DNA from: Gekko japonicus
Lineage: Eukaryota
Direction of reading: 5' to 3'
Length of the DNA: 64,000 nucleotides
Assembly: GCF_001447785.1 (NCBI RefSeq)
Contig: NW_015162475.1
Location: 744,764-808,763 of the forward strand
The notes under the pieces are model-generated. The model did not search any database. It saw only the letters and a program-made list of their open reading frames with translations, and was not told where the DNA came from. Below are positions 3,144-53,566 of the stretch, in pieces; within the stretch, counting starts at the first letter, position 1, and each line of letters begins with the position of its first letter. Both the position numbers and the translations under genes were made by a program.

Positions 3144-3174
3144 ATATGAGAAACTTCCTCCCGGAATGATTAAG
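3144..3174 (+). CDS. RP9: RP9 exon 2 (acceptor degenerate)
   Basis: 31 nt encoding YEKLPPGMIK (RP9 consensus YEKPPPGLIK) with a good AAG|gtaggt donor. The acceptor reads ...ccccg instead of ...ag. Confidence 0.8.
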
Positions 3175-3413
3175 GTAGGTTGGCATGCCATAATGCTTCT
3201 TTTTAATATTTCAGAAACATTTTAAAGGTGCTTCTTAACTTCACAAAGGTGATAGTCAAATTCACTCTGTGTGTCCAGTATATCCTGAGGTGACTTTACC
3301 ATGCGGGGACCATTTGTCATAGATCTGAAGCTGAGGAAAAATAAGCCCACTTTGCTTTTGCACAGAGTTTGTTTTTATGAGTTTATTTTATGAGTTTATT
3401 CCTCTTGTTCCAG

Positions 3414-3543
3414 GAAAATGAGACAAAACCAGAAGACTGCATTCCTGATGTGCCTGGAAATGAAAATGCACGAGAATTCCTCGCACATGCGCCAACAAAA
3501 GGGCTCTGGATGCCTCTAGGGAAAGCGGTCAAAGTTATGCAGT
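3414..3543 (+). CDS. RP9: RP9 exon 3
   Basis: ccag|ENETKPEDCIPDVPGNENAREFLAHAPTKGLWMPLGKAVKVMQ-T|gtaagc, recognisable RP9/PAP-1 core. Confidence 0.95.
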
Positions 3544-5176: not shown

Positions 5177-5268
5177 GCTGGAGATGTAAAAGTTATGAAC
5201 ACAGAAGAGGTGATAAAGAATGTGCTTTCTTCATTAAAGACAATCAGAAGCTTGAACAATTCAGAGTA
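5177..5268 (+). CDS. RP9: RP9 exon 4 (zinc-knuckle-like CxxC..H..C)
   Basis: tttag|(C)WRCKSYEHRRGDKECAFFIKDNQKLEQFRV|gtaagt; phases fit the flanking exons. Confidence 0.93.
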
Positions 5269-6678
5269 GTAAGTAAAATACTGCACATGTAGTGTGTGTG
5301 GGTGGGTGTATTTAATAATTCTGAATAAGCTGATTTAACAATAGCAAACTGGCCCATTTGCAGCCTAAAAAGTACAGACAGCTTTGGCAGTTTCGGCGTG
5401 CTGTTTCTTGGTGGTAGTTCCCAGTAGAGATGAGCAGATTTCCCCCAGTCCATTCCTAGAGGATCCCAACTTACTGTTCCATTTGCACATCTGCAGTTCC
5501 ACCTACAGAACAGCGCTTTTGTTAATGGAGGAGGGGAGGGTGGTTTCTGTCAACTCCCCCTTCCTCTGCAGACCCATTTTTCCTGCAACACTGCTTTTGG
5601 GGGTCCACTGACCCACAGGAACAAAAGGGGGGGGATACAATGTGTTGGGGGAGGTCAGGAAGTTACATTCTTTCAGCATAACTCTGCTTGCGCTGCTTAG
5701 GCTCCAAGTCATATTGTTCCAAACGTTTTCTACATGTTGTTCTGCTCCTCTTTTTTTTTGGTTTGAGAAGGATAGTTTCTAAGTTTAATTCAGAAATGCC
5801 TCTTGTTGCAGCTTTCAGTTAAAGTTCATCTGTGTTTGCACCAGCATTCCTTATGCACTCAAGTACATGATGCATTGATAAAGCTCTGCAAAAAAGCAGT
5901 TGACGTGCTCTGCATCAAGATGCTGAATGCACTGTTTTACTTACTAATCCACTATTCCAGAGTACATGAAAACGAATCTTGACGATTAATCACACCAAGG
6001 TTCCTTTTCTTCCCCCCCCAGTGAGGTATTAATGCGTACATGTGCATCAGTAATATAGAAGAGGGAAAAAACGTTAATGAATGAAGAAGCTGTAAGCTGC
6101 AACAAACTTCATAGACATGATGCTCTGGACACAGTTTAATTTTTTTTAATGAGTGGGGGATTTGTCATGCGTACCCACTCCAGAAACAAGACCAGAACCG
6201 CTACTCCAAGGAGAAGTTTAGATAAAAATGTCAACTGTGCTCTGAGCAGTGTGATACAGAGTGTTGGACTGGATGGGCCTTTGGCCTGATCTTATGTTCT
6301 TATGTTCTTAAATGCATTCTCAATTCACCTTTACTATAGATGATAATGAAAGGGTTATTTAGAAGCCTGGTGTAGCAGAAAGAAGGGTAATAAATGATCA
6401 TGATTATTTATGTAGAGAATTTTTATACCCCCTCTCCAGAGAAACTGCTCTGTATTTGGGGTTGGTTCATATTATATGACTTGGCAGTTCGGGGACAACT
6501 GAAACCCAGAAAATTTAGGAACACATTGCTAATTTGCATGATCATATATTAGAAATACCATAAATGTAAGATGGCTTTGTAATGCATACTAAACCTTTGA
6601 TATCTGGTCGGATTGCATTTTTGGCTTTCGTCATGCAAAACTGTTAGAAATAAGTTCTAAAGCGTTTTCTTTTTCAAG

Positions 6679-6740
6679 GCGCACGAAGACCCCATGTATG
6701 ATATAATAAGGGAAAACAAGCGTCACGAGAAAGAAATGCG
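6679..6740 (+). CDS. RP9: RP9 exon 5
   Basis: tcaag|AHEDPMYDIIRENKRHEKEM-CG|gtaagc. Confidence 0.93.
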
Positions 6741-7048
6741 GTAAGCCTGGCATTCTTTTAAAACATATCCAGGTATTGACTAATAATAAATGCTTAGCAT
6801 TTATATGGCACATAAGGGGGGTCAGAGTGCTCTGAATCCATTGGGTCAGATCAAGTCTGCTTTTTCACTCCATCTTGCTCAGTTCCCCTCCCTACTACAG
6901 ACATCGTCCTACATGGCTTTTGTACCAGCAGGTCCACTGATCCACAGCATAGCCTTTTTGGTTGACCAAGAGGACCCCTCCTTCCCTTTTCGCCAGTAGA
7001 AAAGTTGGATGGATCCAACCTGTTGTCTTTAAGACCCAGTATTATTAG

Positions 7049-7401
7049 GACCTGCAGTGGCTCAAGTGGTTAAGACGCTGAACTGCAGGCTGTGGAAGGT
7101 CGGTAGTTCAGCAGTTCGAGACCCGGGTGCCACATGATGGAGTGAGCTCCTGTCTCTGGCCCCAGCTCCTGCCAACCTAGCAGTTCAAAAGCAAGAAATT
7201 GCAAGTAGATAAATAGGTACCGCTTCAGTGGGAAGGTAACAGCGTTCCGTGCGCCTTGGCGTTTAGTCATGCCGGCCACATGACCACGGAAACGTCTTCG
7301 GACAGTCCTGGCTCTTCAGCTTTGAAACGGAGATGAGCACCGCAACCCTAGAGTCGGATTCGACTGGCTTTCGAGCAAGGGAACCTTTACCTTTACCTTT
7401 T
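7049..7401 (+). mobile_element. Sauria SINE
   Basis: tRNA-like head (gtggctcaagtggttaag...gttcgagaccc), conserved body and (ACCTTT)n tail. Near-identical to the copies at 11186 and 31578. Confidence 0.9.
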
Positions 7402-8013
7402 AATATTAGGGAGCCAGTGATTAGAGCCTAGGTACAATCTCTGACTCGGCCATGAAAATAGCTAGCTGACCTTTGACCTGTCACTCTTTCAGCCAAAGAT
7501 ACTTTGTGTTATTTAAAAAAAATTATCTACTTGCTTACTTCTTTTATGCTGTGAGTTTAAGTTAGGCTGGGAGTGTGTTACTGGCCCAAAGTTGCCCAGT
7601 GAGCTTCCTTGGCAGTGTGGAGATTTGAACCTTGCGTCCCCCTCAGGTCCTTAGAGAATGGGTGGGGCAAAACCGTGATAGACCTCTGTAGTTTAGCAGC
7701 TGTAGTGATAGAGAACAGAGTTCAGATGTGCATTATGGCGTGAAGGTCACTCTCTCTGCTGACCTACCTTTTAGGGTTGTTGTAAAGATAGAGAGGAGGG
7801 AATAATTGGGCATCCTGCACTAAGCCCTTTGAAGGGAGGGTGGGATAAAAATATAATAATGCAGTATTGCCGATGTTGCGGATGAAGGGTTGGGTCTGAG
7901 AGAGAGAGTGGGGTGCCGAACACCACTTTCTGAGGTGAGAGATGAGATTTGAACTCAGCACTTTCTGGTTTAGAACTCGATACTTAAGAGACTGCCCTTC
8001 AGTAGGTTGCAAC

Positions 8014-8219
8014 CAATGCTCCCTCTAAGCTGTGGAGTCTTTTGAGCAAAAAATCTACTTTGTGAGCTACTGGCATTAAAGTTGTAAGCGAGCAATTTGG
8101 CTACAGCATAAATTAGTCTGCTCTGGAGCCATCCTTTCTGAGCTAAGGCAAAAATGTGTGAGCCAGAGGCTAAAACACTGTGAGCTAGCTCACACCAACT
8201 CAGCTTAGAGGGAACACTG
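8014..8219 (+). mobile_element. hAT-type MITE, family A
   Basis: TIRs caatgctccctctaagctg / cagcttagagggaacactg and a perfect 8-bp TSD GTTGCAAC. Confidence 0.9.
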
Positions 8220-8432
8220 GTTGCAACTGTTGATACTTTCAAAATTCAGTGCCAGTTCTAGGGGGAAAACACACACGGACACACACCATTTACCATGTCA
8301 TTAAACTGGTCACCATGTCGCCAGCGTAAGGATTATATTTAAGCAAAAATGAAATAGGTAGATTGTCCAACAAAACGGGGTGTGTGTGTGCGCGCGCATA
8401 ATTTAATCTTCTGGATCCATTTATGTGTTTAG

Positions 8433-8625
8433 GATACAGCAGTTGAAGCAGCTGCTTGAAGACTCCACTTCGGACGAAGACAGCAGCAGTGAGAGCGCCA
8501 GTTCTTCGGGGGGGAAGGAAAGGCACAAGAAAAAGAAGAAAGAGAAAAAGAAGAAAGAGAAAAAGAAGAAGAAAAAGAGAAAGCACAAATCTTCCAAATC
8601 AGACAGAAGGTCAGAATCGGACTGA
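8433..8625 (+). CDS. RP9: RP9 exon 6 (Ser/Lys-rich tail, stop)
   Basis: tttag|(R)IQQLKQLLEDSTSDEDSSSES...KKKKRKHKSSKSDRRSESD*. Candidate AATAAA at 10541-10546. Confidence 0.95.
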
Positions 8626-14166: not shown

Positions 14167-15899
14167 TCACCCATCTCAAGGGGAATCTGACACATCTCTG
14201 GCATTTCTATGCAACATGCAGTACATACAAGATAAGATAGTGAGCATTCCCCCCCCCAAAAAAAAAACAGCCAAAGACACCATTTTGCTTGAGTTGCTAA
14301 ACTGATTTATGATCTGTAGTGTGCAAAGAACACAATACTTCAATTGAGTGCTAAAAGCTGTTCTTTAAGCTATTCAGGAGCTAAAACATCACCTCCAGTT
14401 CAAGACAAATTGTTTACCTAGTATTTAAGGAGTCAAAAGTCATTTTTGTATATATGGGATGTATATTTTTCCTGCACTGGCTAATTTGTGGAGGGTATTT
14501 AGGATACTCTTAAATGACTGAGGCCAACAGCAGGCAAAAGGCTACAAAAGGTGACCTATTTCCAGCGTAATTTGCAAAGCTGGGATTTGCATCTCTGCTC
14601 CAGTAAGTTTCAGGTCCTTACTATGCTTGTTTGCACATAAGGAAGCACAACTACTTATTTCCTTTGACAGTAACCACTGGACTGTCAACCCACCTATGTA
14701 AAGGTACTTGTCATCCCATGTCCAGGCTAACACACTATAAGTTCAGATAACATTCAATCATAGGAGGCAGCTTTCGCCAGGTAATACTACTGTACTTGTG
14801 GCATTGATAATCACACATGCTGAGTGAGACTTTGAATACCCAGCTGCCTAACTTGACAGAACCCTTGTGAAGTTGTGACACAGTGGCTAGGAAGGGAAGA
14901 GCCTCTTCACTTAGCCTTTTCTTCACTTAATAGCGACTGGCACTATCCTTAATGGGCAGCCTTCCTACACAATGTAATCTGTAGGGGAGAAGATAACTAC
15001 ACCCTTTTTATAGGCTCACAGTTAAAATTTAGGTAGCAAGGCGAATTGTTAAATTTGCTAATTTGGCTGGGCAAAATCACAGAGATGGACGGAGCTATTA
15101 TGGATGCCATTAGACGTTGGGTGCATGGCTTGATTAAACCAAGTTTTGTCTGAACACAACCTACAAGTAGACAGTAAATACTAAACTGGGACTCTTAAAC
15201 TATGGTTTGTATCGGTGTTGGTAATTTCTGTTTATCATGAGGTCTGACTATAGATAACCCCCCCCCCCGCAAATTTGCTCAGTAACTCTGTTCTTGTTAG
15301 CCTATTGCACACAGGAAAAAGCACAGACCATGCAATCTTGCTGCTCCAGCAGCATATACCTCTCAGCAGAGCTTTCTAAGATATCCCCCCCCCCCGAGGA
15401 CACACCCTGAGCAGGAACATGCTTGAGTTTTCAGCCTTTCCCAAAGGAAAATTAAAGCAGCAATGAAATTGTGACAGTATGGATCGGTGGAGAAGACCGA
15501 TCCTTTGAGAAATTCAGGAACCCAGTGAAACACACTCAGGTGGAGAGGGAGACCAATCATTTGCAAAGAGGTACCTTGCCTTGCTGTGCCCATTTATTGC
15601 AGCAAACCAACAACAAGCAAGCTGTAACATGTGGTGAGGCTTTGCCATCAGCCCAACAGTACATCATGGAACCTTGAGAGAACATCCAGAGAGATAGGAA
15701 ATGAGGCAAGTAGCACTACTGGGGGTTTACAAAGAACGGTCTGTTATGTCACCCAACCGGGGGGGGGGGGGTCATGCAAACTGGTTTAAACAAATATGTC
15801 TGAATGTAGTCATTCATCACACCGCTTTTAAGATTGTCATTTTGTTCAATACACAGGTCGGTAACATGTACATGAGGTTTCAATAAGTGATACAAGACA

Positions 15900-16101: not shown

Positions 16102-16148
16102 TCACAGTTCTGATCTTCCTTTATAGAGAGATCTTCTCACTCCATGTA
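16102..16148 (-). CDS. velo1: Bucky ball/Velo1 ortholog, last coding exon
   Basis: Strong acceptor ttaatttctttgtgcag|, phase 1, encodes (V)HGVRRSLYKGRSEL*, followed by ATTAAA signals. Confidence 0.65.
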
Positions 16149-18249
16149 CTGCACAAAGAAATTAAGGAATGTTAGTATTTTGTTTCTTTTTAAATATGCA
16201 CTTGCTACTTCCGCAATGGCTTGTATGTGTTTAGCTTGAGACACACTGATTCAAGATTCACCTGAAATCCTTATATATGGGTGATGCCTCAAGATAGATC
16301 CCATTCACGGCTGCAGAGAATGAAGCACCCAATGGTATTTTGGTGAGAACCCACACTAAATGGTACAGGTTTTTTTGCAGCTTTACTCTGCCTACTATTA
16401 AGAAGAGTCTAAACAGGATAAAATGGCCCATTCAGGTGCATGTAGCGTCCTCTTTAAGGTTTGTGCCATTTCAGAATTCTTCTCTGGCCAAGCTTAAGTC
16501 TTGTCCCGTAATACCTTGCTGGGGAAAGCTAAAACATTAAGGAGATGATGCCAAAGCTGCCTACATCTAATGTACCAGCTTTCCTTTTTCTTCCAATGTA
16601 TTTGGGAAAGCTTTTGAATATATAAAACATACCAAGCGCAAAGAATTACAGTGAGCCTGTCATGACCAAACACTACCGTTGAATTGTGATATTATATGCT
16701 ACGTCACAGATTAACTCTGCAGACATTTGCAACTCAGCAGGGAATTGCTTGCCCGTTTCCGTTTGTAGGTGAGTTCTTAGGAAGAGATGGGTTCCAGACA
16801 CTTCTGCATAAGCATGTGGGGAGATACTGCAAGGGATCATGGACGCATATGGCTCCACACGCACCCCAAACATTACAGCCCTGCAAGGACTACATGTCCA
16901 CTGCCTTTCCCAAGCATTACAACTGGACTCAGGCCTTTGTTTCAGTGCATAGTCCACTTTGCCAGGAATACTCAAAGGAAGCCCTCGCTCCCACTGCCAG
17001 AAGGTAGTCCTTTTACTCAGAGGAAAAAATGAGGCATGATATAAACAGATTTCACTGCAAACATGCTTGCAGACAGACTTGGCCTACAAAGGACAGATGA
17101 ACGGGCTGAGCTGCTGAAGTACAGCCTTGCTCCCCTGGAAGCTACTAGCAAGGAATGTGCAACAGATTCTAAGTTCTGCTGTACATTCCTTGCTAGTAAC
17201 TGCTTGTCTGTCGACCTATCCTATAAGACATACAGTTCATTGGTTCCCAGCATCCTGGTGGTAAAGCACAGGTGTTGAACTCATTTGTTATGATGTCACT
17301 TTTGCCAGGCCAGGCCATGTGTGCCATAAAATGTAATGTCAGGTGTCAGAGATGTAAACTTTATAAAGCACACAGGCAAACCCAATCAAGGATATTTTTA
17401 CTCAAAACACAAAGATGCTTAAAACATCAACACTCTTACGGACACCCTTTGCTCTGAATTATTGCATCAAATAATCAGTCAGCATCTGTGCTGTAGTAGC
17501 AGTCTTAAATATACTGTTTAAGTGTGTATCTGGAAGCTGAGAACATAACTTTTGATTTATTGACATTACAGGAAAGAGCTGTTCACAAACATACGTTGTC
17601 TCCAACAGACAGAATTTTAGAAGCAAAATCCTTAAGTTTCAGGTACGCAAAAACTGCTAAAATTTCCTAATGCCAACTTCAGAAAGCAGCAATCACACTG
17701 TCCCCCCACCTATCTGCGATTTGTGGCATCCTTTCACCGGTAGGTGGCAAGCAGTGTGAATGTCCCATTTCATCAATTGTACCAACTCGCTATGTATAAT
17801 CCACCTTGAGAAACTTTCCCTGTCCATCCCCCTATCCTTCCGTGCACAAGTAGTCCCAGAGGTTCTCTTCCCTCTCTGAAAATACACTTCCCCACTACAC
17901 TAGATCAGCAACTTTTTCTCTGTGCAACCCAGGAAGCGTTCATGTGTGCAAAGCAGGGTTTCTTCCCCACTTAGAGAGGTCCACCCCAAAACATACACAT
18001 ATAAGTTCTCCAAGGAACTGGAGCCACCGCCTTCAGCACTTGCCCAATACACCACAAAAATCATGAACTCTCCACAGATTAATGGCCACCTGTCAATGAC
18101 CAGAACTCTTAGACCAGTCCTTTCATCCCAGATACACTCTGGCATTCCCATTCCTACACTTCCCCTAATGCCCCTTTCAGCAGCTCCCCACCACCACCAC
18201 CCATTGTGGGTGATTTCCCAGAAGCGCTGCTCCGCGCTCACTCCTCCCT

Positions 18250-18456
18250 TTTGCCCCGATGGTACGTAACGTGTCAATTTCACACAAGCTGCTGCGCGGC
18301 CGCATTTTGCCCTGCAGCTTCGTGCGATTTCCCCCGCGACTACTCAATCCTCAAAAAACAGGATTGAGTAGACGTGGGGGAAATCGCACGAAGCTGCGGG
18401 GCAAAATGCGGTCGCGCAGCAGCTTGTGTGAAATTGACACGTACCATCGGGCCAAA
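18250..18456. repeat. Near-perfect ~200-bp palindrome (foldback MITE)
   Basis: Arms of about 100 bp are reverse complements around the loop caaaaaac (18352-18359). Confidence 0.9.
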
Positions 18457-19012
18457 GAGAAGAGTGAGCTCAGAGCCCTTCAGTCAAAGAAGCTCAGTTA
18501 TTGAGGACACAAGAAAAGGCCTTTCCAGTGGCAGCCCTGTGACTATGGAGCAACTTCCCCTGGGGGGGGAGGTGTGTGGCTTCCCCCTCCCTTTTGGTCT
18601 TTAGCAGGCAGCTGTTTTTTTAGGACTGCGTTTGACTAAGTTACTAGCAGTCCGAAATTGTAATTTCAATTAATGTATTTTGTTTTATGTACTTTATCTA
18701 TGTTGTAAGCCGCCTTCAGCTCCATAAGGAAGAAAGGCAGCTAATAAGTGTTTTAAATAAAGGAACCTGTTTGTTTCATGATTACCTCTAAAGCCTCCGG
18801 TACACCCATTCAAAGTCACATGATGGTTTCCAGATTCAGCGGTTCCCTGCATGATCAGAGAGCCCGTCCAAGTGCTGCACGGCTGCTCTTATAAGCCCTC
18901 GTGCCAGGGGAGGCTTTTGGACCCAAGAGGTCATTCAGATTCCTGACTTCAGAACCCACAACTCCACCTCTGGTTCATGCCGCAGCAGCAACCACCGTCT
19001 TCATACACTAAC

Positions 19013-19129
19013 CTTTGTGATGATGGGCGACTTTCATTTTCTCCCACTGCTCTTCTATTTCTGCATCATCTCTTGTGTCCCTGCGCTTGTGCGGAGGCTT
19101 GCGCACCCCTTTCTTCTTCGGCGTGCACT
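19013..19129 (-). CDS. velo1: Bucky ball/Velo1 ortholog, coding exon 4
   Basis: tgcag|...AAAG|gttagt, 117 nt, phase 1-1, open: (E)CTPKKKGVRKPPHKRRDTRDDAEIEEQWEKMKVAHHHK. Confidence 0.7.
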
Positions 19130-19460
19130 CTGCATTCAGAATCATGCAGGTTTATGAAGTCCAGTTAACAGATTTATTCCCTTTACCGTTGTAGTAGGGT
19201 AGGGAATTGGCACCAAAGGGCATGACGTCTGATTGGCCAGTCAGACTAGCTTGCTCTTAAACTAATGGGGAGAGCCACGTGACTCGTTCTCAGGGTTAGT
19301 TGACACAACAGCATTTTTGGATTTGGACCACATCACATGCACAGTGGGGATCTGCAACCCACAATATGCCATTTACCTGCAAGAGACAGTCATTGTGCCC
19401 TCCCAAAACGGACTGGAGCTCAACTCCCCACCCTTATACCATTTTCCCAATTGACACACA

Positions 19461-19872
19461 CACGGGAGTCATTTCCTGCAGGAGCACACAGGAGCGTAGC
19501 TCCGGCAGTAAAGAGCCCAGGGGGCAGGCACATGCATCAAGCCCTGCCCCCTGCTCCCAGCAGCCCTCAGTCAGCGCAAGAAGCAGCCAGGTAAGTTGCA
19601 GAGCCCCACCCCCGGCCTCCCAGTCCAAAACAGTCCAGTGGCACCTTTAAGACCACGTTTTATTCAGGTACAAGCTCTCCCTCCTCTGCGAGGTCAGATC
19701 TGCACGTTCCCCCACCCCAATAGCTAGCAATCCAAAACAGTCCAGTGGAGCCTGAGTGGTGGGTGTTGCATCACTTCCAGTGATGTCAGGGGGTGTGGCA
19801 TATGCAAATAAGTTATGTTAATGAGCTCTACTAATGAGCTCCTACACCTCTTTTTCTACGAAATGACCCTTG
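19461..19872 (+). mobile_element. hAT-type MITE, family B
   Basis: Homologous to 55509-55866; ends ..gtcattt / aaatgacccttg. Confidence 0.75.
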
Positions 19873-20631
19873 CACACACCTATACATCCCTAATGGCTTT
19901 AAGCCCTGGTAAGGAAAGGGTAAGGACTTAGTATGAGCCAGTGCAGAATCTGGGGCCACCAGGTGCAGGCTGGGAAATACCTGGAGATTTTTGGGGTGGA
20001 GCCTAAGGAGGGTGGGGTTTGGAGCACAACGCTACAGAGTTCAGCTTCCAAAGCGGCCATTTTCTGCAGGTGAACGGATGTCTGTCGCCTGGAGATCAGT
20101 TTTAACAGCAGGAGATCTCCAGCCGCCACCTGGAGATTGCCAACCCTAGTGGTGTAGTGGTTAGCCTATTGACCTGAGAGATACAGGTCCAGACCTCTGC
20201 CCACCATGAAACTCACTGGGTGACCTTGGGCAGGTCACTCTCTTGCTACCTAACCTGCCTCACAGGGCTGGTATGAAGATAAAATCGAGGAAGAGAACAA
20301 TTATGTACATTTTGCTGAGCTGCTTGAAAGGATGGTGCAATAAGGTACTTAAACCAACTTGCCTTCTCTCCACTGCGGCTGAAATGTCCTCTTCCTAGGC
20401 TGTTTCTCAGCTGGAGATACTGATGGAAGGGTGACATAGCAGAGCGGAAGTGCCCCAGAACTACAAACCCCGGTCCATATCCACGTACTGCCATGGCAGC
20501 TTTGGGCTCCTTAATGTATCAGGTGCTCACCCAAAATAAGCGACATTCCAACAAATATCACCCATATAAATACAGCATATGGTTGCACTCAGGGAGCCTC
20601 TGTGCTGAGGCAGTTTCAGATTAGATTCTAC

Positions 20632-21026
20632 CAGGGCTATTTTTGGGCAGGAATGCACAGGAATGGAGTTCCGGCTGGCTCCTAAATTGGCCACACCCAG
20701 CAGGAACTCATTAGCATAATAGGCCACACCCAACAGCAGGAACGCATTAGGATTGGCTACATTAGGGGTGTGTGGCCTAACATGCAAAGGAGTTCCTGCT
20801 CCAAAAAAAGCCCTGGGTTTTGACAACAAACAAGGTAAACAGAATAAGAAGCAAAAGGTGGGTGTGGCTGGATGACCACACTTCTGGTAACATGGGGGTG
20901 CGGCCTAATATGCTAATGAGTGGTGCTGTCGGGGTGTGGCCTAATATGCTAATGAGTTTCTGCTGTTGGGTGTGGCCTATTATGCTAATGAGTTCCTGCT
21001 GGGCTTTTTCTACAAAAAATGCCCTG
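20632..21026. mobile_element. hAT-type MITE with tandem GGGTGTGGC / ATGCTAAT units
   Basis: TIRs cagggctatttt / aaaaaatgccctg, perfect 8-bp TSD GATTCTAC. Confidence 0.85.
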
Positions 21027-21184
21027 GATTCTACACACTTCTCGAAATTGCTGCCACAGCCTTTACTTTGAGCAACAGCTTGAGGATTATATGCCCAACC
21101 TAAGCCCCCTTTGTTCGTTTATTCTCCCTCCAGTGGGCAGGAATAACAGACATTCGAATACTCGATCAAGAGATAAAGCCGTAC

Positions 21185-21310
21185 CTGGCTCTCTGCTTTT
21201 GGCCGTGGGAGAGAGTCCACTATGAAGCAGGCTTGCGAACTTGGGCTTCGCACCACTTTTTAGCCAGTAGTCATCAGCTAGGACCCCTCCGCCTTCCTTC
21301 AGTAGCTTTC
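21185..21310 (-). CDS. velo1: Bucky ball/Velo1 ortholog, coding exon 3
   Basis: cttcatcctttgaccag|...CCAG|gtacgg, 126 nt, phase 1-1, open: (G)KLLKEGGGVLADDYWLKSGAKPKFASLLHSGLSPTAKSREP. Confidence 0.75.
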
Positions 21311-21710
21311 CTGGTCAAAGGATGAAGGAAGTAAAATGCCCGTTGCTACGTACCTTGTTTTTGCAAACATTAGCAAATGTATCAGCAGCCTACAGAACTG
21401 AAGACAGAGTGTTCAAAACTGCTTCTAGAATTAAATTCTACAGTTAGCATCCATTTACTATTCGGGCACTGGCCATTAAATCTTACCTAATTCCATCCTC
21501 TTGCTCCTCACCCCATCTCCCATGCACTGATTTAATAGCAGAACCTAATAATTTGCACCTTGGTTTGCAACAATCCTAGCCAGTCTAGTCTAGTTGGCCT
21601 CTTCCAGCTCTAATAAAGGACACTCGTTCCAGCATGAAAATGCACCACAACAAATTACTAAGTTAGAGCCATGATTCCGGGAATGTGCATGAGCTTGTAT
21701 GTACTAGAAA

Positions 21711-22077
21711 TAGGGGTTCCCGACTCCCCAGTCCTTTTGAGCCTCCGGGCACCTTTGGAATTCCAACACAGCATGGCGTGCGCACAAAATGGCTGCTGCA
21801 AAATGGCTGCTTCAGGAGGTGGAGCTAGCCACAAAATGGCTGCTGCAGCTTGCCTTCAGTCACAAAGTGAAGATCCTTGTGCCGTGGTGGCAGCTGCTGC
21901 CAAAGGGTGTTTTGAAAAATCCACACAGCCAATCAATTCTCCAGTGGCCAATCAGCGGCCTTGCTGGGCAAAAGCCCCATCTGGCCCTGCCTACTTTCTA
22001 AAAAAACAGTTGGTGGGCACCAGGAAAGGTGTCAGCAAGCACCACAGCACCCATCGTCACCACGCTGGGGACCCCTG
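21711..22077. mobile_element. hAT (Charlie-like) non-autonomous element
   Basis: Ends taggggttcccga / gctggggacccctg with an approximate TSD tactaga. Confidence 0.65.
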
Positions 22078-22268
22078 TACTAGACACTAGTGTTAACAGG
22101 GACTTAAGAAGTCTGATGAAGGTTCAACTAGTCACCCTCAAAGTATTCTCCCACCCTACATTCAGGCGCTCCATTCCCCTCCCACTCACTTCCCATTGGC
22201 AAAGGGATCGCAGCCAGAAGGAATGCTGCCTTAGAAGTTTTTACCAAGTTACAGGCTCTGTTTTTTAC

Positions 22269-24152
22269 CTGAATACCTTTGTGAATTTCTTCTGTGCCCG
22301 AGCACCTCAAGTTGTTGGGCTGTAGGTTTCTTCAGATAGAAGTTGCAGTCGCCACAGACATCTTCATCCTCTTCTTGGTCCCTCAGTTTGTTAGCTGGTC
22401 TAGAAAGTTTTATTTTTTCTTGAACAGGCCAACTGATGAGCTGGGCTGGAACAGCATTTTTCGGTATCTTCCAAAACACTTGCTTGCCATCCTGTTGGTA
22501 GAAGCCATATTTGGCAGGGGCTAAAGTTCCATAGGGAGCAACTCCTTGGATCAAGTAGTATTCTTCCTTCTCCTCCTCCTCCTCCTCCTCCTCCTCCTCT
22601 TCCTCATCCTCTGGTTCTTTAACCCAGTATTCCTCAGAGTCCTCAGCTTCTGAGGGTGACAAACTCTTAGCGGCTTTTTTCTTAAGGGAATAGAGCTTCT
22701 TTCTACTGGAAGACCTAGGCAGAGTGCCCAACTTTCTACTTCGACTGGAAAGCTCTTTAATCTTGATCCTTGAGCTGCTCTTCACGTTCTGGCCCTCACT
22801 AGCACCAACCTGCTCTCCTCCCACCTTGTCTTTGTTGTCCTCGTCTTCATTGAGGAAACCTCCACTTTTAATTTTTTCTCTCTCTGAGCCCTCTGTGCTT
22901 TTTTTGAAGGGATACCCACTCTTCTGAAATGTATAGCCAGGGGCAAAATAAGACACTGGTAAGTTATCCATCGATGAGCCTTCATCCACAGAAGACATCT
23001 CATCAGAGGTAAGGCTGAGCACACTTGGGCGTTTCCTTTGGGACACATACATGTTGTAGTTGGGGTCCATGTTGTCTATACGAGCCAGCCAACTGTCAGA
23101 AGGAATGTATTTCTCTGACTCATCACACCACAGACTTTTTTCTAGAGTTACTTGACTTTCAAGGGACACCTCATTCTTTTCCTCCAGTTTCTCAGGGAAA
23201 TCAGCATCGCTTGTTTTCTCTCTACCAGACAGACTTTGTTGAATCGGGTCTGACACTTCTTGAGGAGTTTTTGAACCACGGAACCTTTTTGAGCCAGAAG
23301 ATCCTTTGGACATCACAGCTTCTTGCCTCACTCCCATCAAGTCAGGTCCAGTTGGTTCAGCCATCTGCCCTGCTTTGGTGTCATCCAACGGAGATCTTGT
23401 CCAATGGCTCGCAGTTCCTTGCTTTTCTGCATCCAGTTTTCCTTTAAGTTGAGGCTCTTTCTCTTGTACATCCTCAAGAGCCTTTTGCTCCTCTGGGTAA
23501 GTAATACTTGGCACCAACTCCCCTCGGTTAGGAGGCCCATAAATAACTCCTTCACAGGAAGCCAGAGCAAACATATCTCTTTGCATTACATTCTCTGGGA
23601 CTGACTTCTCTGCCACATCATATAGAGGGATTGTTTCTTTGAAGGACTTCCATAACTGAATGGCAGGGGCACCATCATTGTCGTATTCTATCCTGACCTC
23701 CTCTTTCTCATAGGCATAGCCTGCTGGGGGGAGGCTTCGGAACTGTACAGACCCCGAAGAGCTCTTGGTAAAGTCTCTGTCTGGAACACTTGAAAATGCA
23801 GCCCTGTCCTGTTTTTCTACAGGGCTTGCAGCTCCCTTACCAGTACTAGAAGGGGTGTAGGTTGCATTTCCAGCATCACAGCCTTGTGTTTCCATGCTGT
23901 GATCCTGATGCCTTTTCAGTTTGCTTTCAGACTGCTTCTGATCTGTCTGTGTTTCTTTAGTCTCCGTTCGTTTCCCTGGGTTGTAGTGCCTGAACCGTGT
24001 CGCTTGATAAAACATGGGCGAGGGTAGGTGACCATTAAAATAAGGTCTTCTGTTAACTCTCATATGCATGGGATGCTGTGGGACAAGATATCCGGGGTAG
24101 TCATGGAGAGGTATAGAATAGAGTGGGTAATACGGATTTGCATTTCTGAAGC
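22269..24152 (-). CDS. velo1: Bucky ball/Velo1 ortholog, large coding exon 2
   Basis: catctag|(G)FRNANPYYPLYSIPLHDYPGYLVPQHPMHMRVNRRPYFNGHLPSPMFYQATRFRHYNPGKRTETKETQTD matches the second half of the BUVE motif of Xenopus Velo1 as I recall it (..YPGYFVPQ..SPMFYHATRFRHY..RTETKETQTD). 1884 nt open; donor TCAG|gtaaaa. Confidence 0.92.
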
Positions 24153-25234
24153 CTAGATGTGTAAAGAAACAAACACATACATTTCACCAATAGAATATTC
24201 TCCAGGATGCCCCAACTTACAAATTCACTAGTTTATAACACTGTCATTCACCAGAACTTTAGCATGACCAGGTAAGCTATCCACTGGAGGAAACCTTGCA
24301 AGCCACCTTTGTCCTCCATCAGACTAGTTCCCTTCCTTATTAGCATTGCAATCTGTGAACAGCAATCATTGGAACTTTGTCCCAGCTATATGCAGAACCC
24401 AGCTGAGGGAACATCAATGAAGCTTAGGGCACAGTAGTGTTGGCATCCCCATCACATTTCCACACAGGGTTAAACTCATCTGTTATGTCACCCAAAAGCC
24501 AGATTGACAACAGGTCTCAGGCAGCGGCTTGCTCATCCCCTCCCTTCAAGGAAAATTTGAACCCAGAGTCTTCATGTCCCTAGGAGAATGAACCAATTAG
24601 AAAGCAGATTCTTGGGCCAAGAAGATTCTTAGCCACTTTAGTTCAGTTATTCACTTCTCCAGAACAGGAAATGGGCAAAGAGAAGGGGAAGTATAAGGCC
24701 TGCCCCTCTGCCCATCCTGGGTATAATTCATGGTTCCAAGTTAGAGCAAGCAGGCCACATTCACAAGGGCATTCACATGGTACATGAGAACAGTTATGGC
24801 AGAAAGGCATTTGATCCAAGCCTGCCCAAGACATTTTGGTGCTCAAGGGGAAGTATCCAGGAGAGTGCCTTCCTCACAGTAAAATAAACTGACAATTATA
24901 TCCTTTAGCAGAGCGCTTCTGTGCATCTGAAGAAGCAAGCATACATTCACACAAGCACTTATGCCAAAATAAGTTTTAGTCTTCGAGATTCTGCTGGTCT
25001 CCTGAGTTGATGAAGTCTTTTGTGTCACTACCTGCATGTTTCTGGCAGTCTCACACACTGAAGTTCTGCTACTAACATGGTTGACCAAGAGGATCTCTAC
25101 TAAAAGACAAACTAACCCTAGTTTGGTAGCTAAAGCTACAGGGATGTCTGTATAAACATACTATATTAGATTAACATTAACCAGCTACAAAGAAACTTTG
25201 GACATTAACTCCTAACATGGAAGTTAGCACAAGA

Positions 25235-25575
25235 TGGGCAGCCATATTAGTTCATCTGTGGCAGTAGAAAAAGAGCAAGAGTCCAGTAGCACCTTAAAGA
25301 CTAGCACAATTTGTGGCAGGGTAGGACCTTTTGTGAGTCACTGCTCATTTCTTCAGAAACAGCTAGAATGCAAGCCCCTCTGTCCTTATATCATGGAAAG
25401 TGTTTCTTGGAGTGCCTGCTATTGTCATTCGGAATCTGAAGCCACTCCACTCTCCAAAATATAGGACAGATGGACTCACATTCCTGTATCTGAAGAAGTG
25501 AGCAGTGACTCACAGAAGCTCGCACCCTGCCACAAATTGTGCTAGTCTTTAAGGTGCTACTGGACTCTTGTTCTT
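25235..25575. mobile_element. Penelope-like inverted-repeat remnant
   Basis: caagagtccagtagcaccttaaagactagc ... gctagtctttaaggtgctactggactcttg. Related pieces at ~38030-38190 and ~1740-1880. Confidence 0.5.
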
Positions 25576-25704
25576 CCCTAATGAAAGTCAGCAGAAAGCT
25601 TAAAGCTCCAGAACAGATTCCAGGGGTTTTAGCAGCAGCAGTCTATGTCATTTGCTCAAGCTACACATTCCCTCCTCCCCTCAGTCATTTGCAACTTGCC
25701 TTAC

Positions 25705-25849
25705 CTGTGGCAGGAACACCATATGGGTTGTATACAGGGCCAAGGAAGCATGGATTCGGGAACATTTGCTGTGCAGTCGGTTGAGCGTAAAAAAAGGGCT
25801 TTTGGTTTGTGGGATAGGGTCCACTTTCTGAGGCAGGAGCAGCATTCAT
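25705..25849 (-). CDS. velo1: Bucky ball/Velo1 ortholog, first coding exon (BUVE N-terminus)
   Basis: tttctag|gctagaagATG, then MNAAPASESGPYPTNQKPFFYAQPTAQQMFPNPCFLGPVYNPYGVPAT-G|gtaagg. PFFYAQP is the Buc/Velo signature. Phase 1 joins exon 2 in frame. Confidence 0.92.
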
Positions 25850-34819: not shown

Positions 34820-35850
34820 CCCCGTGACGAGCCGAGACGCGCGTGCGCAAAAGCGGGGACGGGCGAGCGACTTTTTCAAAATACGGGAGGAGGGAGAACG
34901 GCGGTTGCACTGCACATGCGTACATCTCCCTCGGCCCGTCTACTCCCGCCTACGTTCGACGCCCTCGCTCGGAGCCTGCGCAGGAGTGGGACGGCAAGCG
35001 ACGGGCCTGCGCGTCGCGCGCTCTTTCTCCTTCTGCTCCTCAACGGACGCCGCGGGCGGGCGGAAAAAAGGAGGTGAGAGAACGCGCGCGGAGCCTCCGT
35101 GTATCCCTCCGCCGGGGCTCTTTCTTTGTACTCTTCCCTCATCCTTCGCGGCTGTTTCTCCGCTCCTGCGAGGCGGCGGCGAGGAGGGAAAGCGGTCGGG
35201 CGGCTTCCTCCTATGGTGGGTAGGCCTTACTCCCTTCGCGAGGGAAGAGATGGCGGCGGCAGCCCTCCCCGCCTCTCTCTCCGAAGGGGAGACGGCCGAG
35301 GGGGGGACCGGGGCGTCGCTGCGCCCCTGTGGGGAAGCGGAGGAGGAAGAGGGAAGCAGCCGGGCTGGGCTCCTCCGGCGGAGCGGCGGCGGCCGGCACC
35401 GGCTTCCCCGGAGTGTAATGGCGGGAGAGGGGAGGGGGCGCTGCTGTGTCGATTCTGCGCCGAGAGACCCTGACCCCGCGAGGCTGCCCTTCCTCTGGGC
35501 GGCGGCGGTTGCGGGCCCAGGGAGGGAGAGAGCGAGCGAGAGAGCGGCGCTTGCGGTGCCCCCCCCCCTTCCGGCCTGCGGACGGCGGTGGCCGAGGGAA
35601 GGGGCCGGGTGCTCGGAGGCCGCGCAGCCAGCCAGCCAACCAGCGCCCCCCCTCCCCGGTGCCGTAGTGCGGCTCAGTGCAGACGGGAGGTGCTCCTGAC
35701 GCTTCGCCAAAGCTCCAGCTCAGGTGAAGGTCTGCATTGCAGCCGCAGTCGGGGGGGGGGGCGAACTGCGTGGCAGGGCTGTTCTGGGTGTTCGTGTTGA
35801 GGCCGCTTGCCGGACTGGCATTAGGAAGCGTTCCCAGCAGCCGCGAAAAG
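34820..35850 (+). promoter_or_regulatory. KBTBD2: CpG island, promoter and non-coding first exon of KBTBD2
   Basis: About 1 kb CpG-dense, with an NRF1-like GCGCGTGCGCA (~34839) and a YY1-like AGATGGCGGC (~35248). It is the nearest CpG island upstream of KBTBD2 exon 2. The exact exon-1 donor is not resolved. Confidence 0.75.
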
Positions 35851-36344
35851 GGAACGAGATAAGATTACGGCAGGGTAGCCCCTAGGGATGATCCTGAGTG
35901 CCCCACAGGGAGGGGCGAGCAACTTCTTTTTATCCCCCTGGGAAGCTGGCTGCAGATGGAAAAGTCGTGGTAAGGTATCTTTCGTCGTGAGAAAAGCTTT
36001 TTGCCTGAGTGTAGTTTGTAGACCTGCCGTGGTCTGTTTTTGTTTGCTTGTTCTTTGACCACGAACGGCAGTGTTTCAGTGACAATGCGGATGAAATGTG
36101 GTGTTTGAGAATAGTCTCCAGATCACCTGCTGCCATCTGTTTTGTGTATGGCAGATGTAAATCTAGTTTTCTTCTTGAAGCAATACATACAATCGCCTTT
36201 GGATTGTAAAGGGAGGGTAGGGTTGAGCGTTTGGCATGCTGGTGTGTGGGAGAGAAATTATTACAACATTGGGGGTTTATCTCTCATTGCTTAGTATTTT
36301 AAAATTTGGCAGTATGAGCTTTTGTAGGTCTGCATAATGCTATT

Positions 36345-36810
36345 TATTTTATTTTACCAAACCTGTCCCCTGCTTTTTCTGCCTTTTTAAGGGCCATCAG
36401 GGTGGCTAACAAATTAAAAACAGACATAATTAAATCACATCTTTTAAGCCCACAAAAGCACATCATTAAAACAATTAAAGCCAACAAAAACACATCATTA
36501 AAAAAATTAAAAGCATAACTAAAATGAATGTACAAAAAACCAATAATTAAAATACTGGTCAGGAAGGAGGGATCACTGAGGGAAGGCCAAGCATAACAAA
36601 ACATAATGTCTCCACCTGCTGGCAGAAGGTGGCAACAGACAAGGAGATGGATGAATCTCCCCAGGGAGGGAGTTTCAGAGTATTGGTACCATAAGTGAGA
36701 AGGAGCAGGTTGCCCTGCTCCTGTTCTCATAAGATGGGAACACCTGACGCAGGGCCTCTGAAGATGACCACAGTGGTTGAGTAGATTCATAAGGGAGCAG
36801 GTGGTCCTAA
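36345..36810 (-). mobile_element. L2 LINE 3' fragment
   Basis: tttatttt tail and cagggtggctaaca end, with a degenerate L2 body. Confidence 0.55.
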
Positions 36811-42899: not shown

Positions 42900-42930
42900 A
42901 TCTAAATCAACATTTTTTTATTTTTTGTTA

Positions 42931-46585: not shown

Positions 46586-46755
46586 ATGTCTACCCAGGAA
46601 GAAAGGCAGATCAATACGGAATATGCTGTATCTTTACTGGAGCAGTTAAAGCTGTTCTATGAACAGCAGTTACTAACTGACATAGTTTTAATTGTTGAGG
46701 GTACTGAATTCCCATGCCATAAGATGGTTCTTGCTACATGTAGTTCTTACTTCAG
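46586..46755 (+). CDS. KBTBD2: KBTBD2 coding exon 1 (BTB domain start)
   Basis: [58 protein letters not shown]|gtatgt. Confidence 0.97.
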
Positions 46756-47725
46756 GTATGTGCTTCAGTCATAGTTGCTTTTTCTTTAAAAAAAAAAAGT
46801 ACTAAATGCTGCTGCTACTCAGATGTTCACAATGTTCAATATATAACATGGTTGTAATGTTGGTTCTGCTCCATAACTTTAAAATGGAAGACTGAAATAT
46901 TTTTTTAAGTTGCTAATATGGAAACACTAGGTCAGTTTTTGCAGTTCAAACCACTTCAGTGGTCACATGTGCCCTGCAGTGGAAGTGGAAAATCTACACT
47001 GTAAGAATGTGGCTGTCAGATAATTGCTATTTATGCAGACAGCATCCTAGTTTGTGGGGAGTAGAGTCATTATGGAAGAAAGTCTGTTTAGTGGGAATAA
47101 GATCTAAAGTGTTGAGCCCATGCTCATGCTACCCTAAGATTGATGGCAAGTGTATCTAAGGAAAAAGAAACAGGCTGCTGTTGTTTTATGGTCTAATAGA
47201 AGGGGTTGGCCCAGAAAAATATTATATGCACACACACTAGCCACCTTGAATTTGTGGAGGTGAGGCGGCATACAACTATTTTAAACAGAGGTTGGATTCC
47301 ATTGATGCTGAAGATTGTTAATCTTAAGGTTAGGGAGATCAGCACGCCTCGTTTTTAACTAAGTAGTGAAGTGATTGGGGAGGTAATTTGCATGGTGCTC
47401 GTTAGGTCAAATAGATGCCACCGAGGATGAACTCAAAAGTATAGGGTGCCCTGAAATAGGGGAGAGAATGCCAGGATGTGCATGTTTCCTCCATGCTTTG
47501 CTCTCTGATTTCTTAAGTATTTGAATTTTTGAGTGGTTTAGCAAGTACGTATGCTGTGCTTTGGGTATCATTTTTTTTTTGCCAAAACAAAAGGCATACA
47601 TCTAGTATGTTTGAGGGGTGCGGTGTCTTCATGGTGGTGCAAGGTGGTGACTGGCCAGCACCAGTGGTTTGAATATTTTAAGACAGGGTGTTCAAATATT
47701 TTCCAAATCATTTCCAAATCATTTC

Positions 47726-51796: not shown

Positions 51797-52030
51797 ACTG
51801 TGTGTAGGCACTTTGTCCCCTTCCTTGGTTGTAGGCTGCAGACAACCCTAGTGTTGGTTTGTCTTCAGTGTGGGAAGAGGCCTATACTCTGTAACTGATC
51901 CCTTCACCCTTGCAAAGTAGACATTTCAATACAACTGCATCTTTTTCTACTGTTGTGCATAATTGTGGCTCTTGTACATTATTTTACAAAAGCAATACTT
52001 TGCTTCTAATGTGGTGTTTTTTCATTGCAG

Positions 52031-53566
52031 GTAGAAGATGTATTACAACGGTGTAGAGAATACTTAATTAAAAAAATAAATGCAGAGAACTGTGTGCGAC
52101 TCTTGAGTTTTGCTGACCTTTTCAGTTGTGAAGAGTTAAAACAGAATGCTAAGAGGATGGTAGAACACAAGTTCACCGCTGTATACCATCAGGATGCTTT
52201 CATGCAGCTCTCTCATGATCTATTGATAGATATTTTGAGCAGTGACAACTTAAATGTGGAAAAGGAGGAGACAGTTCGTGAAGCTGCTATGTTGTGGCTG
52301 GAGTATAACACAGAAGCTAGATCACAGTATTTGTCGTCTGTTCTTAGCCAAATAAGAATTGATGCACTTTCTGAAGTTACCCAGAGAGCTTGGTTTCAAG
52401 GCTTGCCACCAAATGATAAGTCCGTTGTGGTTCAAGGATTGTATAAATCTATGCCTAAGTTTTTTAAGCCAAGGCTTGGAATGACTAAAGAGGAGATGAT
52501 GATCTTCATCGAAGCTGCTGCTGAAAATCCTGGTAATCTTTACTCTTCAGTATGCTACAGCCCACAGGCTGAAAAAGTTTACAAGCTCTGCAGCCCTCCT
52601 GCTGACTTGCATAAGGTTGGAACACTTGTAACTCCTGATAATGATATTTATATAGCAGGTGGGCAAATTCCACTGAAAAACACAAAAGCCAATCACAGTA
52701 AAACAAGCAAACTTCAGGTTGCCTTCCGAACTGTGAATTGCTTTTACTGGTTTGATGCCCAGCAGAACACTTGGTTTCCAAAGAGTCCAATGCTGTTTGT
52801 TCGCATAAAGCCATCCCTGGTTTGCTGTGAAGGCCACATCTATGCAATTGGAGGAGACAATGTCGGTGGAGAGCTCAACAGGAGAACTGTAGAAAGATAT
52901 GATACAGAGAGAGATGAATGGACCATGGTAAGCCCATTGCCCTGTGCATGGCAATGGAGTACAGCAGTTGCTGTTCATAATTGCATTTATGTAATGGCAC
53001 ACAATTTGATGTACTGTTACTTCCCGAGGTCAGATGCTTGGGTTGAAATGGCTATGAGACAGACTAGTAGGTGCTTTGCTTCAGCTGCTGCTTTTGGAGA
53101 TAAAATATTTTACATTGGTGGCTTGCATGTTGGCAGCAACTCTGGTATAAGACTCCCAACTAGCACTGTAGATGGGTCTTCCGTAACTGTGGAAGTCTAT
53201 GATGTGAATAAAAATGAATGGCGAACGGCAGCCAATATCCCTGCCAAGCGGTATTCTGACCCCTGCGTCAGAGCTGTTGTGATCTCCAATTCTTTATGTG
53301 TGTTCATACGAGAAACCCACATGAATGAGAGAGCCAAGTATGCCACCTACCAATATGATATGGACCTTGACCGGTGGTTCTTGCGGCAACATATTTCTGA
53401 GCGGGTGCTATGGGATCTAGGAAAAGACTTTCGATGCACTGTGGGAAAACTGTATCCATCTTGCCTTGAAGAGTCTCCATGGAAGCCTCCACCATATCTC
53501 TTTCCATCAGATGGAGCAGATGAATTTGAGCTGCACGGAGAGATGGTTACACTGCCCCCTGTATAG
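52031..53566 (+). CDS. KBTBD2: KBTBD2 coding exon 3 (BACK + Kelch repeats, stop)
   Basis: ttgcag|[25 protein letters not shown]...GG Kelch motifs...EMVTLPPV*. Spliced total is 623 aa. Confidence 0.98.

What the first reader, a model, noticed from the sequence alone, without database searches (positions are those of the whole stretch)
16102..25849. Intact Bucky ball / Velo1 (Balbiani-body and germ-plasm organiser) gene in a lizard
Seen: five minus-strand exons (25849-25705, 24152-22269, 21310-21185, 19129-19013, 16148-16102), all joined by phase-1 GT-AG introns. They give 2319 nt, or 772 aa, with no internal stop. The ORF track shows only a 606-aa middle piece and misses the diagnostic N-terminus. 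Known: the Pro/Tyr/Phe/Asn/Gln-rich N-terminus (PFFYAQP...NPY...YPGY.VP...SPMFY.ATRFRHY) is the BUVE motif of zebrafish Buc and Xenopus Xvelo. These proteins build the Balbiani body, and Buc organises germ plasm. As I recall, they lie next to KBTBD2. Inference: this squamate retains the master organiser of an amyloid-like oocyte condensate. That bears on the unresolved question of whether lizards specify germ cells by inherited germ plasm or by induction. Such genes are often annotated only as uncharacterised LOCs.
Basis: partly seen in the sequence, partly recalled or inferred. Interest (0 to 1): 0.92.

Follow-up and report, generated by a model that had tools for sequence, protein, structure and literature searches.

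The report
Gecko copy of the Bucky ball gene
This is an intact gecko copy of Bucky ball/Velo1, the disordered protein that builds the Balbiani body in fish and frog oocytes, but the gene was already reported in lizards and snakes and its presence alone does not say how geckos make germ cells.

Summary
Five minus-strand exons (25849-25705, 24152-22269, 21310-21185, 19129-19013, 16148-16102) have GT-AG, phase-1 junctions and give 772 codons plus TGA with no internal stop. Each exon aligns colinearly to RefSeq gecko models.

The gene is the single-copy orthologue of vertebrate buc/velo1.
- The BUVE motif is present and split over exons 1 and 2.
- The central Vasa-binding motif is conserved, including the three residues shown to matter in zebrafish.
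- The protein is predicted to be disordered.
- KBTBD2 lies head-to-head about 9-10 kb upstream, which is the published conserved synteny.
- The gene tree follows the species tree, with the window sister to Gekko kuhli.

The novelty claim does not hold. Skugor et al. 2016 already listed Buc in green anole, python, garter snake and cobra. They also showed intact buc in turtles and non-primate mammals, which use induction. Presence therefore does not decide between germ plasm and induction.

The C-terminal tri-RG (Tdrd6a) motif of zebrafish Buc is missing, as in nearly all sauropsids.

The scan has one other note on this same window (BUVE split over two exons) and none on other DNA. It is an ordinary orthologue of low interest.

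The parts
25705..25849 (-). Coding exon 1 (ATG plus 48 codons plus 1 nt). It holds the first half of the BUVE / prion-like motif.
   Evidence: BLASTP to the zebrafish-type Buc P0233 aa 18-53 gives E 5e-5. It aligns to the N-termini of all orthologues.
22269..24152 (-). Coding exon 2 (1884 nt, 627 whole codons). It makes up the bulk of the protein.
   Evidence: There are 173 homologues; the top hit is Gekko kuhli at 92% identity. Identity to the frog Rhinophrynus orthologue is 43% over 618 aa, E 3e-134.
23926..24152 (-). Second half of the BUVE motif (YPGY.VP, RRPYFN, RFRH, ETQTD).
   Evidence: One search gives the translation. BLASTP to P0233 aa 71-146 gives E 1e-7.
22957..23025 (-). Counterpart of the Buc Vasa-binding motif (zebrafish aa 372-394). 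13 of 23 residues are identical, and D379, E386 and S389 are conserved.
   Evidence: Second HSPs (5e-4; 0.013). The motif is defined in PMC8533965 and PMC6219760.
22565..22611 (-). Poly-Glu tract encoded by a trinucleotide repeat. It is longer here than in other geckos.
   Evidence: Tandem repeat; alignment columns 601-640.
21185..21310 (-). Coding exon 3 (126 nt, phase 1-1, so it could be skipped in frame).
   Evidence: The Emydura isoform X2 lacks the equivalent block.
19013..19129 (-). Coding exon 4 (117 nt, phase 1-1). It is a strongly basic block (KPPHKRRDTR).
   Evidence: It is 32% K+R. The Alligator sinensis isoform X2 lacks the equivalent block.
16102..16148 (-). Coding exon 5 plus TGA. 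The tail ends ...RRSLYKGRSEL and has no RG motif.
15593..15598 (-). Candidate polyadenylation signal AATAAA, about 505 nt after the stop.
   Evidence: This is position only and is not verified by reads.
35000..36000 (+). CpG-rich island (GC 0.68), probably the KBTBD2 promoter and first exon. Buc itself has no such island.
46586..46771 (+). Open segment holding the KBTBD2 start codon and the start of the BTB domain. The exon's 3' end within the segment was not determined.
   Evidence: segment beginning MSTQEERQ....
52025..53566 (+). Last KBTBD2 coding exon (residues 111-623, BACK plus Kelch). This is the syntenic neighbour.
   Evidence: Pfam BACK and Kelch. (PDB 8gq6 KBTBD2, 1122 bits, chain residues 111-623).

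Best explanation
The locus is the intact, single-copy gecko orthologue of vertebrate bucky ball (buc) / velo1.

Shown here:
- A five-exon, 772-codon gene.
- The N-terminal 105 aa or so form the aromatic, Pro- and Q/N-rich, acid-poor BUVE/prion-like motif.
- The central Vasa-binding motif is conserved.
- The C-terminal block is basic.
- The rest is predicted to be disordered.
- The gene lies divergently next to KBTBD2.

Inferred from zebrafish, Xenopus and chicken work:
- The gene is transcribed in early oocytes.
- The prion-like N-terminus self-assembles into the matrix of the Balbiani body. Histology has described that structure in gecko germ cells.
- The central motif recruits and activates Vasa/DDX4.
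- The disordered basic C-terminus helps to bring in RNA and organelles.

Regulation through a dimethylated tri-RG/Tdrd6 site, as in zebrafish, is not expected, because that motif is absent. Whether the protein also acts as a germ-plasm determinant in the embryo is open.
For: - Gene model: and colinear alignment of each exon to the Heteronotia RefSeq model.
- Family, forward search: a sauropsid profile searched against 1.84 billion representatives gave only 64 hits. These include frog (3e-226), caecilian, opossum XP_007489212, coelacanth, lungfish, elephant shark LOC103183429, Amia 'bucky ball' (8.6e-13), a cyprinid Bucky ball cluster (2.4e-8) and Chanos 'bucky ball'.
- Family, reverse search: a profile built only from 102 fish Buc sequences ranks exon 2 first and exon 1 second, colinearly, among 1682 six-frame segments of the window.
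- Direct BLASTP of exon 1 and exon 2 to the zebrafish-type Buc P0233 gives E 5e-5 and 1e-7 within BUVE.
- Vasa-binding motif.
- Disorder: mean pLDDT 36 and pTM 0.20 for the closest full-length orthologue; composition.
- Synteny: matching PMC5080839.
- Orthology: the gene tree matches the species tree, with the window sister to Gekko kuhli.
- Clusters hit contain the accessions published as Buc for anole and garter snake.
- Balbiani bodies have been seen in gecko germ cells (PMC10813461).
Against: - There is no expression evidence.
- The tri-RG motif that is essential for Balbiani-body formation in zebrafish is absent.
- Similarity to teleost Buc is confined to short motifs. The fish-only profile gives 23 bits for exon 2 and 8.8 bits for exon 1.
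- The fold used a shallow 17-sequence alignment and a proxy orthologue, so low confidence is only suggestive of disorder.
Confidence: 0.85

Rival explanations
1. The gene is functional, but only for Balbiani-body, oocyte-polarity or organelle organisation. It plays no part in specifying primordial germ cells, and geckos use induction.
For: Intact buc is retained in turtles and non-primate mammals, which use induction (PMC5080839). Lizard PGC positions resemble the inductive pattern in at least Lacerta (PMC8481613). The zebrafish tri-RG motif is absent.
Against: Chicken Buc also has a reduced RG tail, yet it is reported as a germ-plasm component (PMC9546911 and PMC11557578). The Vasa-binding motif is fully conserved. 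No gecko embryo data were available.
Confidence: 0.5
2. The protein is a true germ-plasm organiser in geckos, which would mean preformation. This is what the first reader hoped for.
For: All three conserved Buc motifs are present. Balbiani bodies are visible in gecko germ cells. Snakes have been proposed to use preformation.
Against: Presence of the gene is not diagnostic. No expression or localisation data exist for geckos. The literature search found no paper that links Buc with lizards or geckos.
Confidence: 0.2
3. The gene is a silent or decaying relic: an open frame kept by chance or lost only recently.
For: No transcript evidence could be obtained. The squamate branches of the gene tree are long.
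Against: The frame has 772 intact codons, four canonical splice pairs and a good start context. Intact orthologues were returned for the squamates, turtles, crocodilians and birds in the search. Conservation is concentrated in the functional motifs (0.86-0.92) rather than the linkers (about 0.6).
Confidence: 0.03

Closest known systems
Zebrafish Bucky ball (Buc, 639 aa). It is represented here by P0233, which matches the published zebrafish C-terminal peptide and the published Vasa-binding-motif residue numbering.
   Same: - BUVE motif, colinear: exon 1 aligns to aa 18-53 and exon 2 to aa 71-146.
- Vasa-binding motif aa 372-394, 13 of 23 identical, with D379, E386 and S389 kept.
- Disordered overall.
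- The family's conserved position beside kbtbd2. In teleosts that position is held by the buc2 paralogue, which zebrafish lacks.
   Different: - Similarity outside these motifs is not detectable by BLASTP.
- There is no tri-RG Tdrd6a-binding tail.
- The gecko protein is about 130 aa longer.
- It carries a block near exon-2 aa 140-215 (YAYEKEEVRIEY...IQLWKSFKETIPLYDV) that is conserved from cartilaginous fish to tetrapods but is largely missing in ray-finned fish.
Xenopus Velo1 / Xvelo. It was compared here only through the pipoid frog Rhinophrynus orthologue P0121.
   Same: Identity is 43% over 618 aa of exon 2 (E 3e-134). [quoted passage not shown]
   Different: The Xenopus protein itself was not retrieved. 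The frog tail (..YRGHGL.K..) keeps one or two RG motifs, whereas the gecko tail keeps none.
Chicken Buc (LOC420478/LOC420748) and other sauropsid 'uncharacterized LOC' / 'Bucky ball' models
   Same: Identity is 50-57% over the whole of exon 2. The exon blocks are the same, and the C-terminal tail is of the same ...SLYKRR type.
   Different: Gekkonid tails read ..VHG[VM][RK]RSLYKGRSEL instead of ..KG[RH]GT[RK]KSLYKRR, and the poly-Glu tract is longer. The chicken protein has experimental localisation data and the gecko protein has none.
Squamate Buc already published (Skugor et al. 2016: Anolis XP_008111035, Thamnophis XP_013909729, Python, Ophiophagus)
   Same: They are orthologues. The clusters holding those accessions are hit at 61% and 50% identity over 100% of exon 2 and fall in the same squamate clade.
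   Different: The family is different (Gekkota). No identical protein was found in the 5.8-billion-sequence collection, so this species' copy appears to be unannotated there.

Membership tests
Buc/Velo1 (BUVE-motif germ-plasm / Balbiani-body organisers) | N-terminal BUVE motif (zebrafish aa 23-136, with conserved cores at 24-84 and 114-128) | tested here: met
   The alignment shows RPFFY.QP, YPGY.VP, RR..N.H.PS, RFRH and E.QTD shared with fish, frog and shark. BLASTP to P0233 gives 5e-5 for exon 1 and 1e-7 for exon 2. Profile hits to named fish 'bucky ball' proteins fall at profile positions about 10-130. The motif definition comes from PMC6219760.
Buc/Velo1 | Central conserved motif, the Vasa-binding motif (zebrafish aa 372-394; D379, E386 and S389 are functionally important) | tested here: met
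   Window 22957-23025 matches P0233 aa 372-394 at 13 of 23 residues, and all three key residues are kept. HSPs score 5e-4 against Amia and 0.013 against Danionella.
Buc/Velo1 | Conserved synteny beside kbtbd2 (kbtbd2-avl9-lsm5 block) | tested here: met
   KBTBD2 lies on the opposite strand. Its last exon at 52025-53566 scores 1122 bits to PDB 8gq6, with BTB exons and a CpG island upstream. The synteny is stated in PMC5080839. AVL9 and LSM5 lie outside the window.
Buc/Velo1 | Intrinsically disordered protein with a prion-like N-terminus | tested here: met
   AF2 of the closest full-length orthologue gives mean pLDDT 36, pTM 0.20 and almost no secondary structure. The N-terminal 105 aa or so are about 19% aromatic, 18% Pro, 14% Q/N and about 2% acidic. 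Caveats: the alignment was shallow and a proxy sequence was folded.
Buc/Velo1 | Single-copy orthology (gene tree follows species tree) | tested here: met
   The quick maximum-likelihood tree has 24 of 27 inner branches at SH-aLRT 95 or more. The window is sister to Gekko kuhli inside Gekkota, then Squamata, then Sauropsida.
Zebrafish-type Buc regulation by Tdrd6a | C-terminal tri-RG motif (RG-x0-4-RG-x0-4-RG), symmetrically dimethylated | tested here: not met
   Exon 5 and exon 4 contain no RG. Ray-finned fish tails have 3-4 RG, and sauropsid tails have 0-2, mostly 0-1. The feature therefore defines the actinopterygian proteins, not the family.
Buc/Velo1 | Oocyte-specific expression and localisation to the Balbiani body | not testable with these tools
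No gecko expression paper was found.
Germ-plasm organiser (functional class) | Sufficient to induce ectopic PGCs; segregates with germ plasm in cleavage embryos | not testable with these tools
   This needs the zebrafish 16-cell assay, or immunostaining of gecko embryos.

The most novel reading that the evidence does not exclude
Geckos use maternally inherited germ plasm organised by this Buc protein, even though the Tdrd6-binding tri-RG tail is lost. That would make Gekkota a squamate lineage with preformation, and would show that amniote Buc condensates are regulated differently from those of zebrafish.
Probability: 0.15. Interest if true: 0.65.

Novelty: new member of a known kind. Interest (0 to 1): 0.2.

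Why it matters
The result gives a verified gene model and motif map for Buc in a gekkonid, where relatives are annotated only as 'uncharacterized LOC'. That is a usable reagent for in situ probes, antibodies or fusion constructs to ask how lizards specify germ cells. By itself it settles nothing. The gene is retained in vertebrates with either mode of germ-cell specification, and it was already reported in squamates in 2016.

Tried and rejected
- Pfam has no model for any exon. This says nothing about family membership, because the family has no Pfam entry.
- I considered that the missing tri-RG tail might be a gecko-specific loss. I rejected this because nearly all sauropsid tails have 0-1 RG.
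- I looked for the KBTBD2 BTB exon among long ATG-ORFs and found nothing. A stop-to-stop scan then found it.
- I ran no further search on retrieving Xenopus Velo1 itself. A pipoid frog orthologue and the published XVelo peptide served as proxies.
- The five exons were never joined into one sequence for any search or fold. Each was searched by reference. The fold used the closest full-length orthologue, P0002, with alignment A2.
Full report
**Observation**

Exon 1 (25849-25705, minus strand) opens with ATG. It has A at -3 and an in-frame TAG six bases upstream, and it encodes 48 residues plus one base. Exons 2-5, read in phase 1, are all open: 627, 41, 38 and 14 codons, then TGA.

A script checked every boundary.
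- There are four GT donors and four AG acceptors behind pyrimidine tracts.
- Every intron is phase 1, with split codons G, G, E and V.
- The total is 2319 nt, or 772 codons plus stop.
- The window has no N.

The mechanical ORF list shows only the 606-aa piece 22249-24069. The three internal exons (2-4) have lengths that are multiples of three, so each could be skipped in frame. Orthologue isoforms lacking the exon-3 block (Emydura X2) or the exon-4 block (Alligator sinensis X2) exist.

Each exon was searched by reference. For the fold I used the closest full-length orthologue.

**Gene model**

Aligned as separate rows, the five window pieces fall colinearly on the Heteronotia binoei RefSeq protein (762 aa) at 85, 86, 95, 89 and 86% identity. 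They also align to other squamate, turtle, crocodilian and bird proteins.

**Relatives**

Exon 2 alone finds 173 proteins.
- Gekko kuhli is at 92% identity and other geckos at 79-84%.
- Other squamates are at 50-68%.
- Turtles, crocodilians and birds are at 50-57%.

Most hits are named 'uncharacterized LOC'. Several are named 'Bucky ball' or 'bucky ball-like' (Gopherus, Alligator, Emydura, Limosa, Ficedula). No identical protein is in the collection, so this species' copy seems to be unannotated there. Pfam has no model for any exon.

**Link to fish Buc and frog Velo1**

A profile of 17 sauropsid proteins (A2) was searched against 1.84 billion representatives and gave only 64 hits. Names were recovered.
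- Frog Rhinophrynus (3e-226).
- Caecilian, platypus, coelacanth, lungfish and felids.
- Opossum XP_007489212 and elephant shark LOC103183429.
- Amia 'bucky ball' (8.6e-13), Brienomyrus (1.8e-10), a cyprinid 'Bucky ball' cluster (2.4e-8), Engraulis and Chanos 'bucky ball'.

The fish hits match profile positions about 10-130, which is the BUVE region.

The reverse test also works. A profile built only from 102 ray-finned-fish Buc proteins, run against all 1682 six-frame segments of the window, ranks exon 2 first (2.6e-6, 23 bits) and exon 1 second (0.06, 8.8 bits). The two hits are colinear, at profile positions 22-56 and then 57-421.

**A zebrafish-type reference sequence**

P0233 is 639 aa long. 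It carries exactly the zebrafish Buc C-terminal peptide listed in Roovers et al. 2018. It also has D379, R384, E386 and S389 at the positions given by Perera et al. 2021. I treat it as zebrafish-type Buc.
- Window exon 1 aligns to its aa 18-53 (E 5e-5).
- The start of exon 2 aligns to its aa 71-146 (E 1e-7).
- Both fall inside BUVE, aa 23-136 (definition in PMC6219760).

The multi-taxon alignment shows the shared cores RPFFY.QP, YPGY.VP, RR..N.H.PS, RFRH and E.QTD from elephant shark to gecko.

**Other functional motifs**

The central conserved motif of Buc is aa 372-394, shown to bind and activate Vasa (PMC8533965). Its gecko counterpart is at window 22957-23025. It is identical at 13 of 23 residues, and D379, E386 and S389 are all kept.

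[quoted passage not shown] It is present in ray-finned fish tails but absent from the gecko tail. This is not a gecko peculiarity, because sauropsid tails carry 0-2 RG, mostly 0-1.

A block of about 70 residues (exon-2 aa 140-215) is nearly invariant in sauropsids and is shared with frog and cartilaginous fish. It is largely missing in ray-finned Buc. Its role is unknown.

**Physical character**

The N-terminal 105 aa or so are about 19% aromatic, 18% Pro, 14% Q/N and almost free of acidic residues. Exon 4 is 32% K+R. There is a 35-aa acidic tract.

AlphaFold2 on the Heteronotia orthologue with alignment A2 gives mean pLDDT 36, pTM 0.20 and essentially no secondary structure. This is consistent with an intrinsically disordered protein. 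The caveat is the shallow alignment.

**Synteny**

The 513-aa ORF at 52025-53566 on the plus strand is BACK plus Kelch. It matches KBTBD2 residues 111-623 with 1122 bits. The BTB-encoding exons lie at about 46586-46771 and about 48600-48770. A CpG island lies at 35-36 kb (GC 0.68).

Buc and KBTBD2 are therefore head-to-head, with about 9-10 kb between the Buc ATG and the KBTBD2 island. Skugor et al. 2016 report buc beside kbtbd2-avl9-lsm5 from elephant shark to tetrapods.

**Orthology**

A quick maximum-likelihood tree was built from 30 proteins, using exon 2 for the window. The careful search did not finish within the time limit. The tree reproduces the species tree.
- The window is sister to Gekko kuhli (SH-aLRT 97).
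- It sits within Gekkonidae, then Gekkota (100), then Squamata (100).
- Turtles, crocodilians and birds form the sister group.
- Opossum, amphibians, and the lungfish, coelacanth and shark lie outside.

The squamate branches are comparatively long.

**What is already known**

Table S1 of Skugor et al. 2016 lists Buc for green anole (XP_008111035), python, garter snake (XP_013909729) and cobra. The clusters holding the anole and garter-snake accessions are among my hits.

The same paper states that buc is conserved in turtles and non-primate mammals, which use induction, while primates, rodents and axolotl have lost it. Chicken Buc has been studied experimentally (PMC9546911, PMC11557578). A full-text search found no paper that links Buc with lizards or geckos beyond this. 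Balbiani bodies have been described histologically in gecko germ cells (PMC10813461).

**Interpretation**

The gene is an ordinary, intact orthologue of buc/velo1. The most likely mechanism is carried over from Xenopus and zebrafish.
- Oocyte expression.
- Self-assembly of the prion-like N-terminus into the Balbiani-body matrix.
- Recruitment of Vasa by the central motif.
- Recruitment of RNA and organelles by the disordered basic C-terminus.

These steps are inferred, not shown.

**What could not be done**

Long-term purifying selection is supported only indirectly. Intact frames were returned for the sauropsids, and conservation is concentrated in the motifs (0.86-0.92) rather than in the linkers (about 0.6).

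**Verdict**

The novelty and significance are overstated. This is a new member of a known kind, of low interest.

Noticed in passing
window 35000-53566 (+): KBTBD2 lies here. A CpG island (GC 0.68) is at 35-36 kb, the start codon and BTB exon at about 46586-46771, a second BTB exon at about 48600-48770, and the BACK/Kelch exon at 52025-53566. The gene is head-to-head with Buc.
   Followed up: partly
window 40094-42106 (+): Retroelement debris sits in the first KBTBD2 intron. There is a weak L1 ORF1-like (Transposase_22) match at 40250-40747, and a 265-aa open segment at 41312-42106 that looks like the end of a reverse transcriptase.
   Followed up: no
window 20685-20750 and 20895-21001: Two short arrays of a 36-bp unit lie in the intron between Buc exons 3 and 4. 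The two consensus units look like reverse complements of one another, so this may be an inverted-repeat element.
   Followed up: no
window 22565-22611: A trinucleotide repeat encodes the poly-Glu tract of Buc. It is about a dozen residues longer than in Heteronotia or Eublepharis, so the tract is length-variable among geckos.
   Followed up: partly
window 16102-16148, and the orthologue tails: Gekkonid Buc proteins (the window, Heteronotia, Paroedura) end ..VHG[VM][RK]RSLYKGRSEL. Most sauropsids end ..KG[RHC]G..[KR][KR]SLYKRR. The tri-RG Tdrd6a site of ray-finned fish is reduced to 0-2 RG (mostly 0-1) across sauropsids.
   Followed up: yes
exon-2 aa about 140-215 (window about 23506-23730): A block (..YAYEKEEVRIEY..IQLWKSFKETIPLYDV..) is nearly invariant across sauropsids and is shared with frog and cartilaginous fish. 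It is mostly absent from ray-finned Buc, and I found no function described for it in the papers read.
   Followed up: partly
window 1060-8625: Another first-stage note places RP9 here, downstream of Buc. I did not check it.
   Followed up: no
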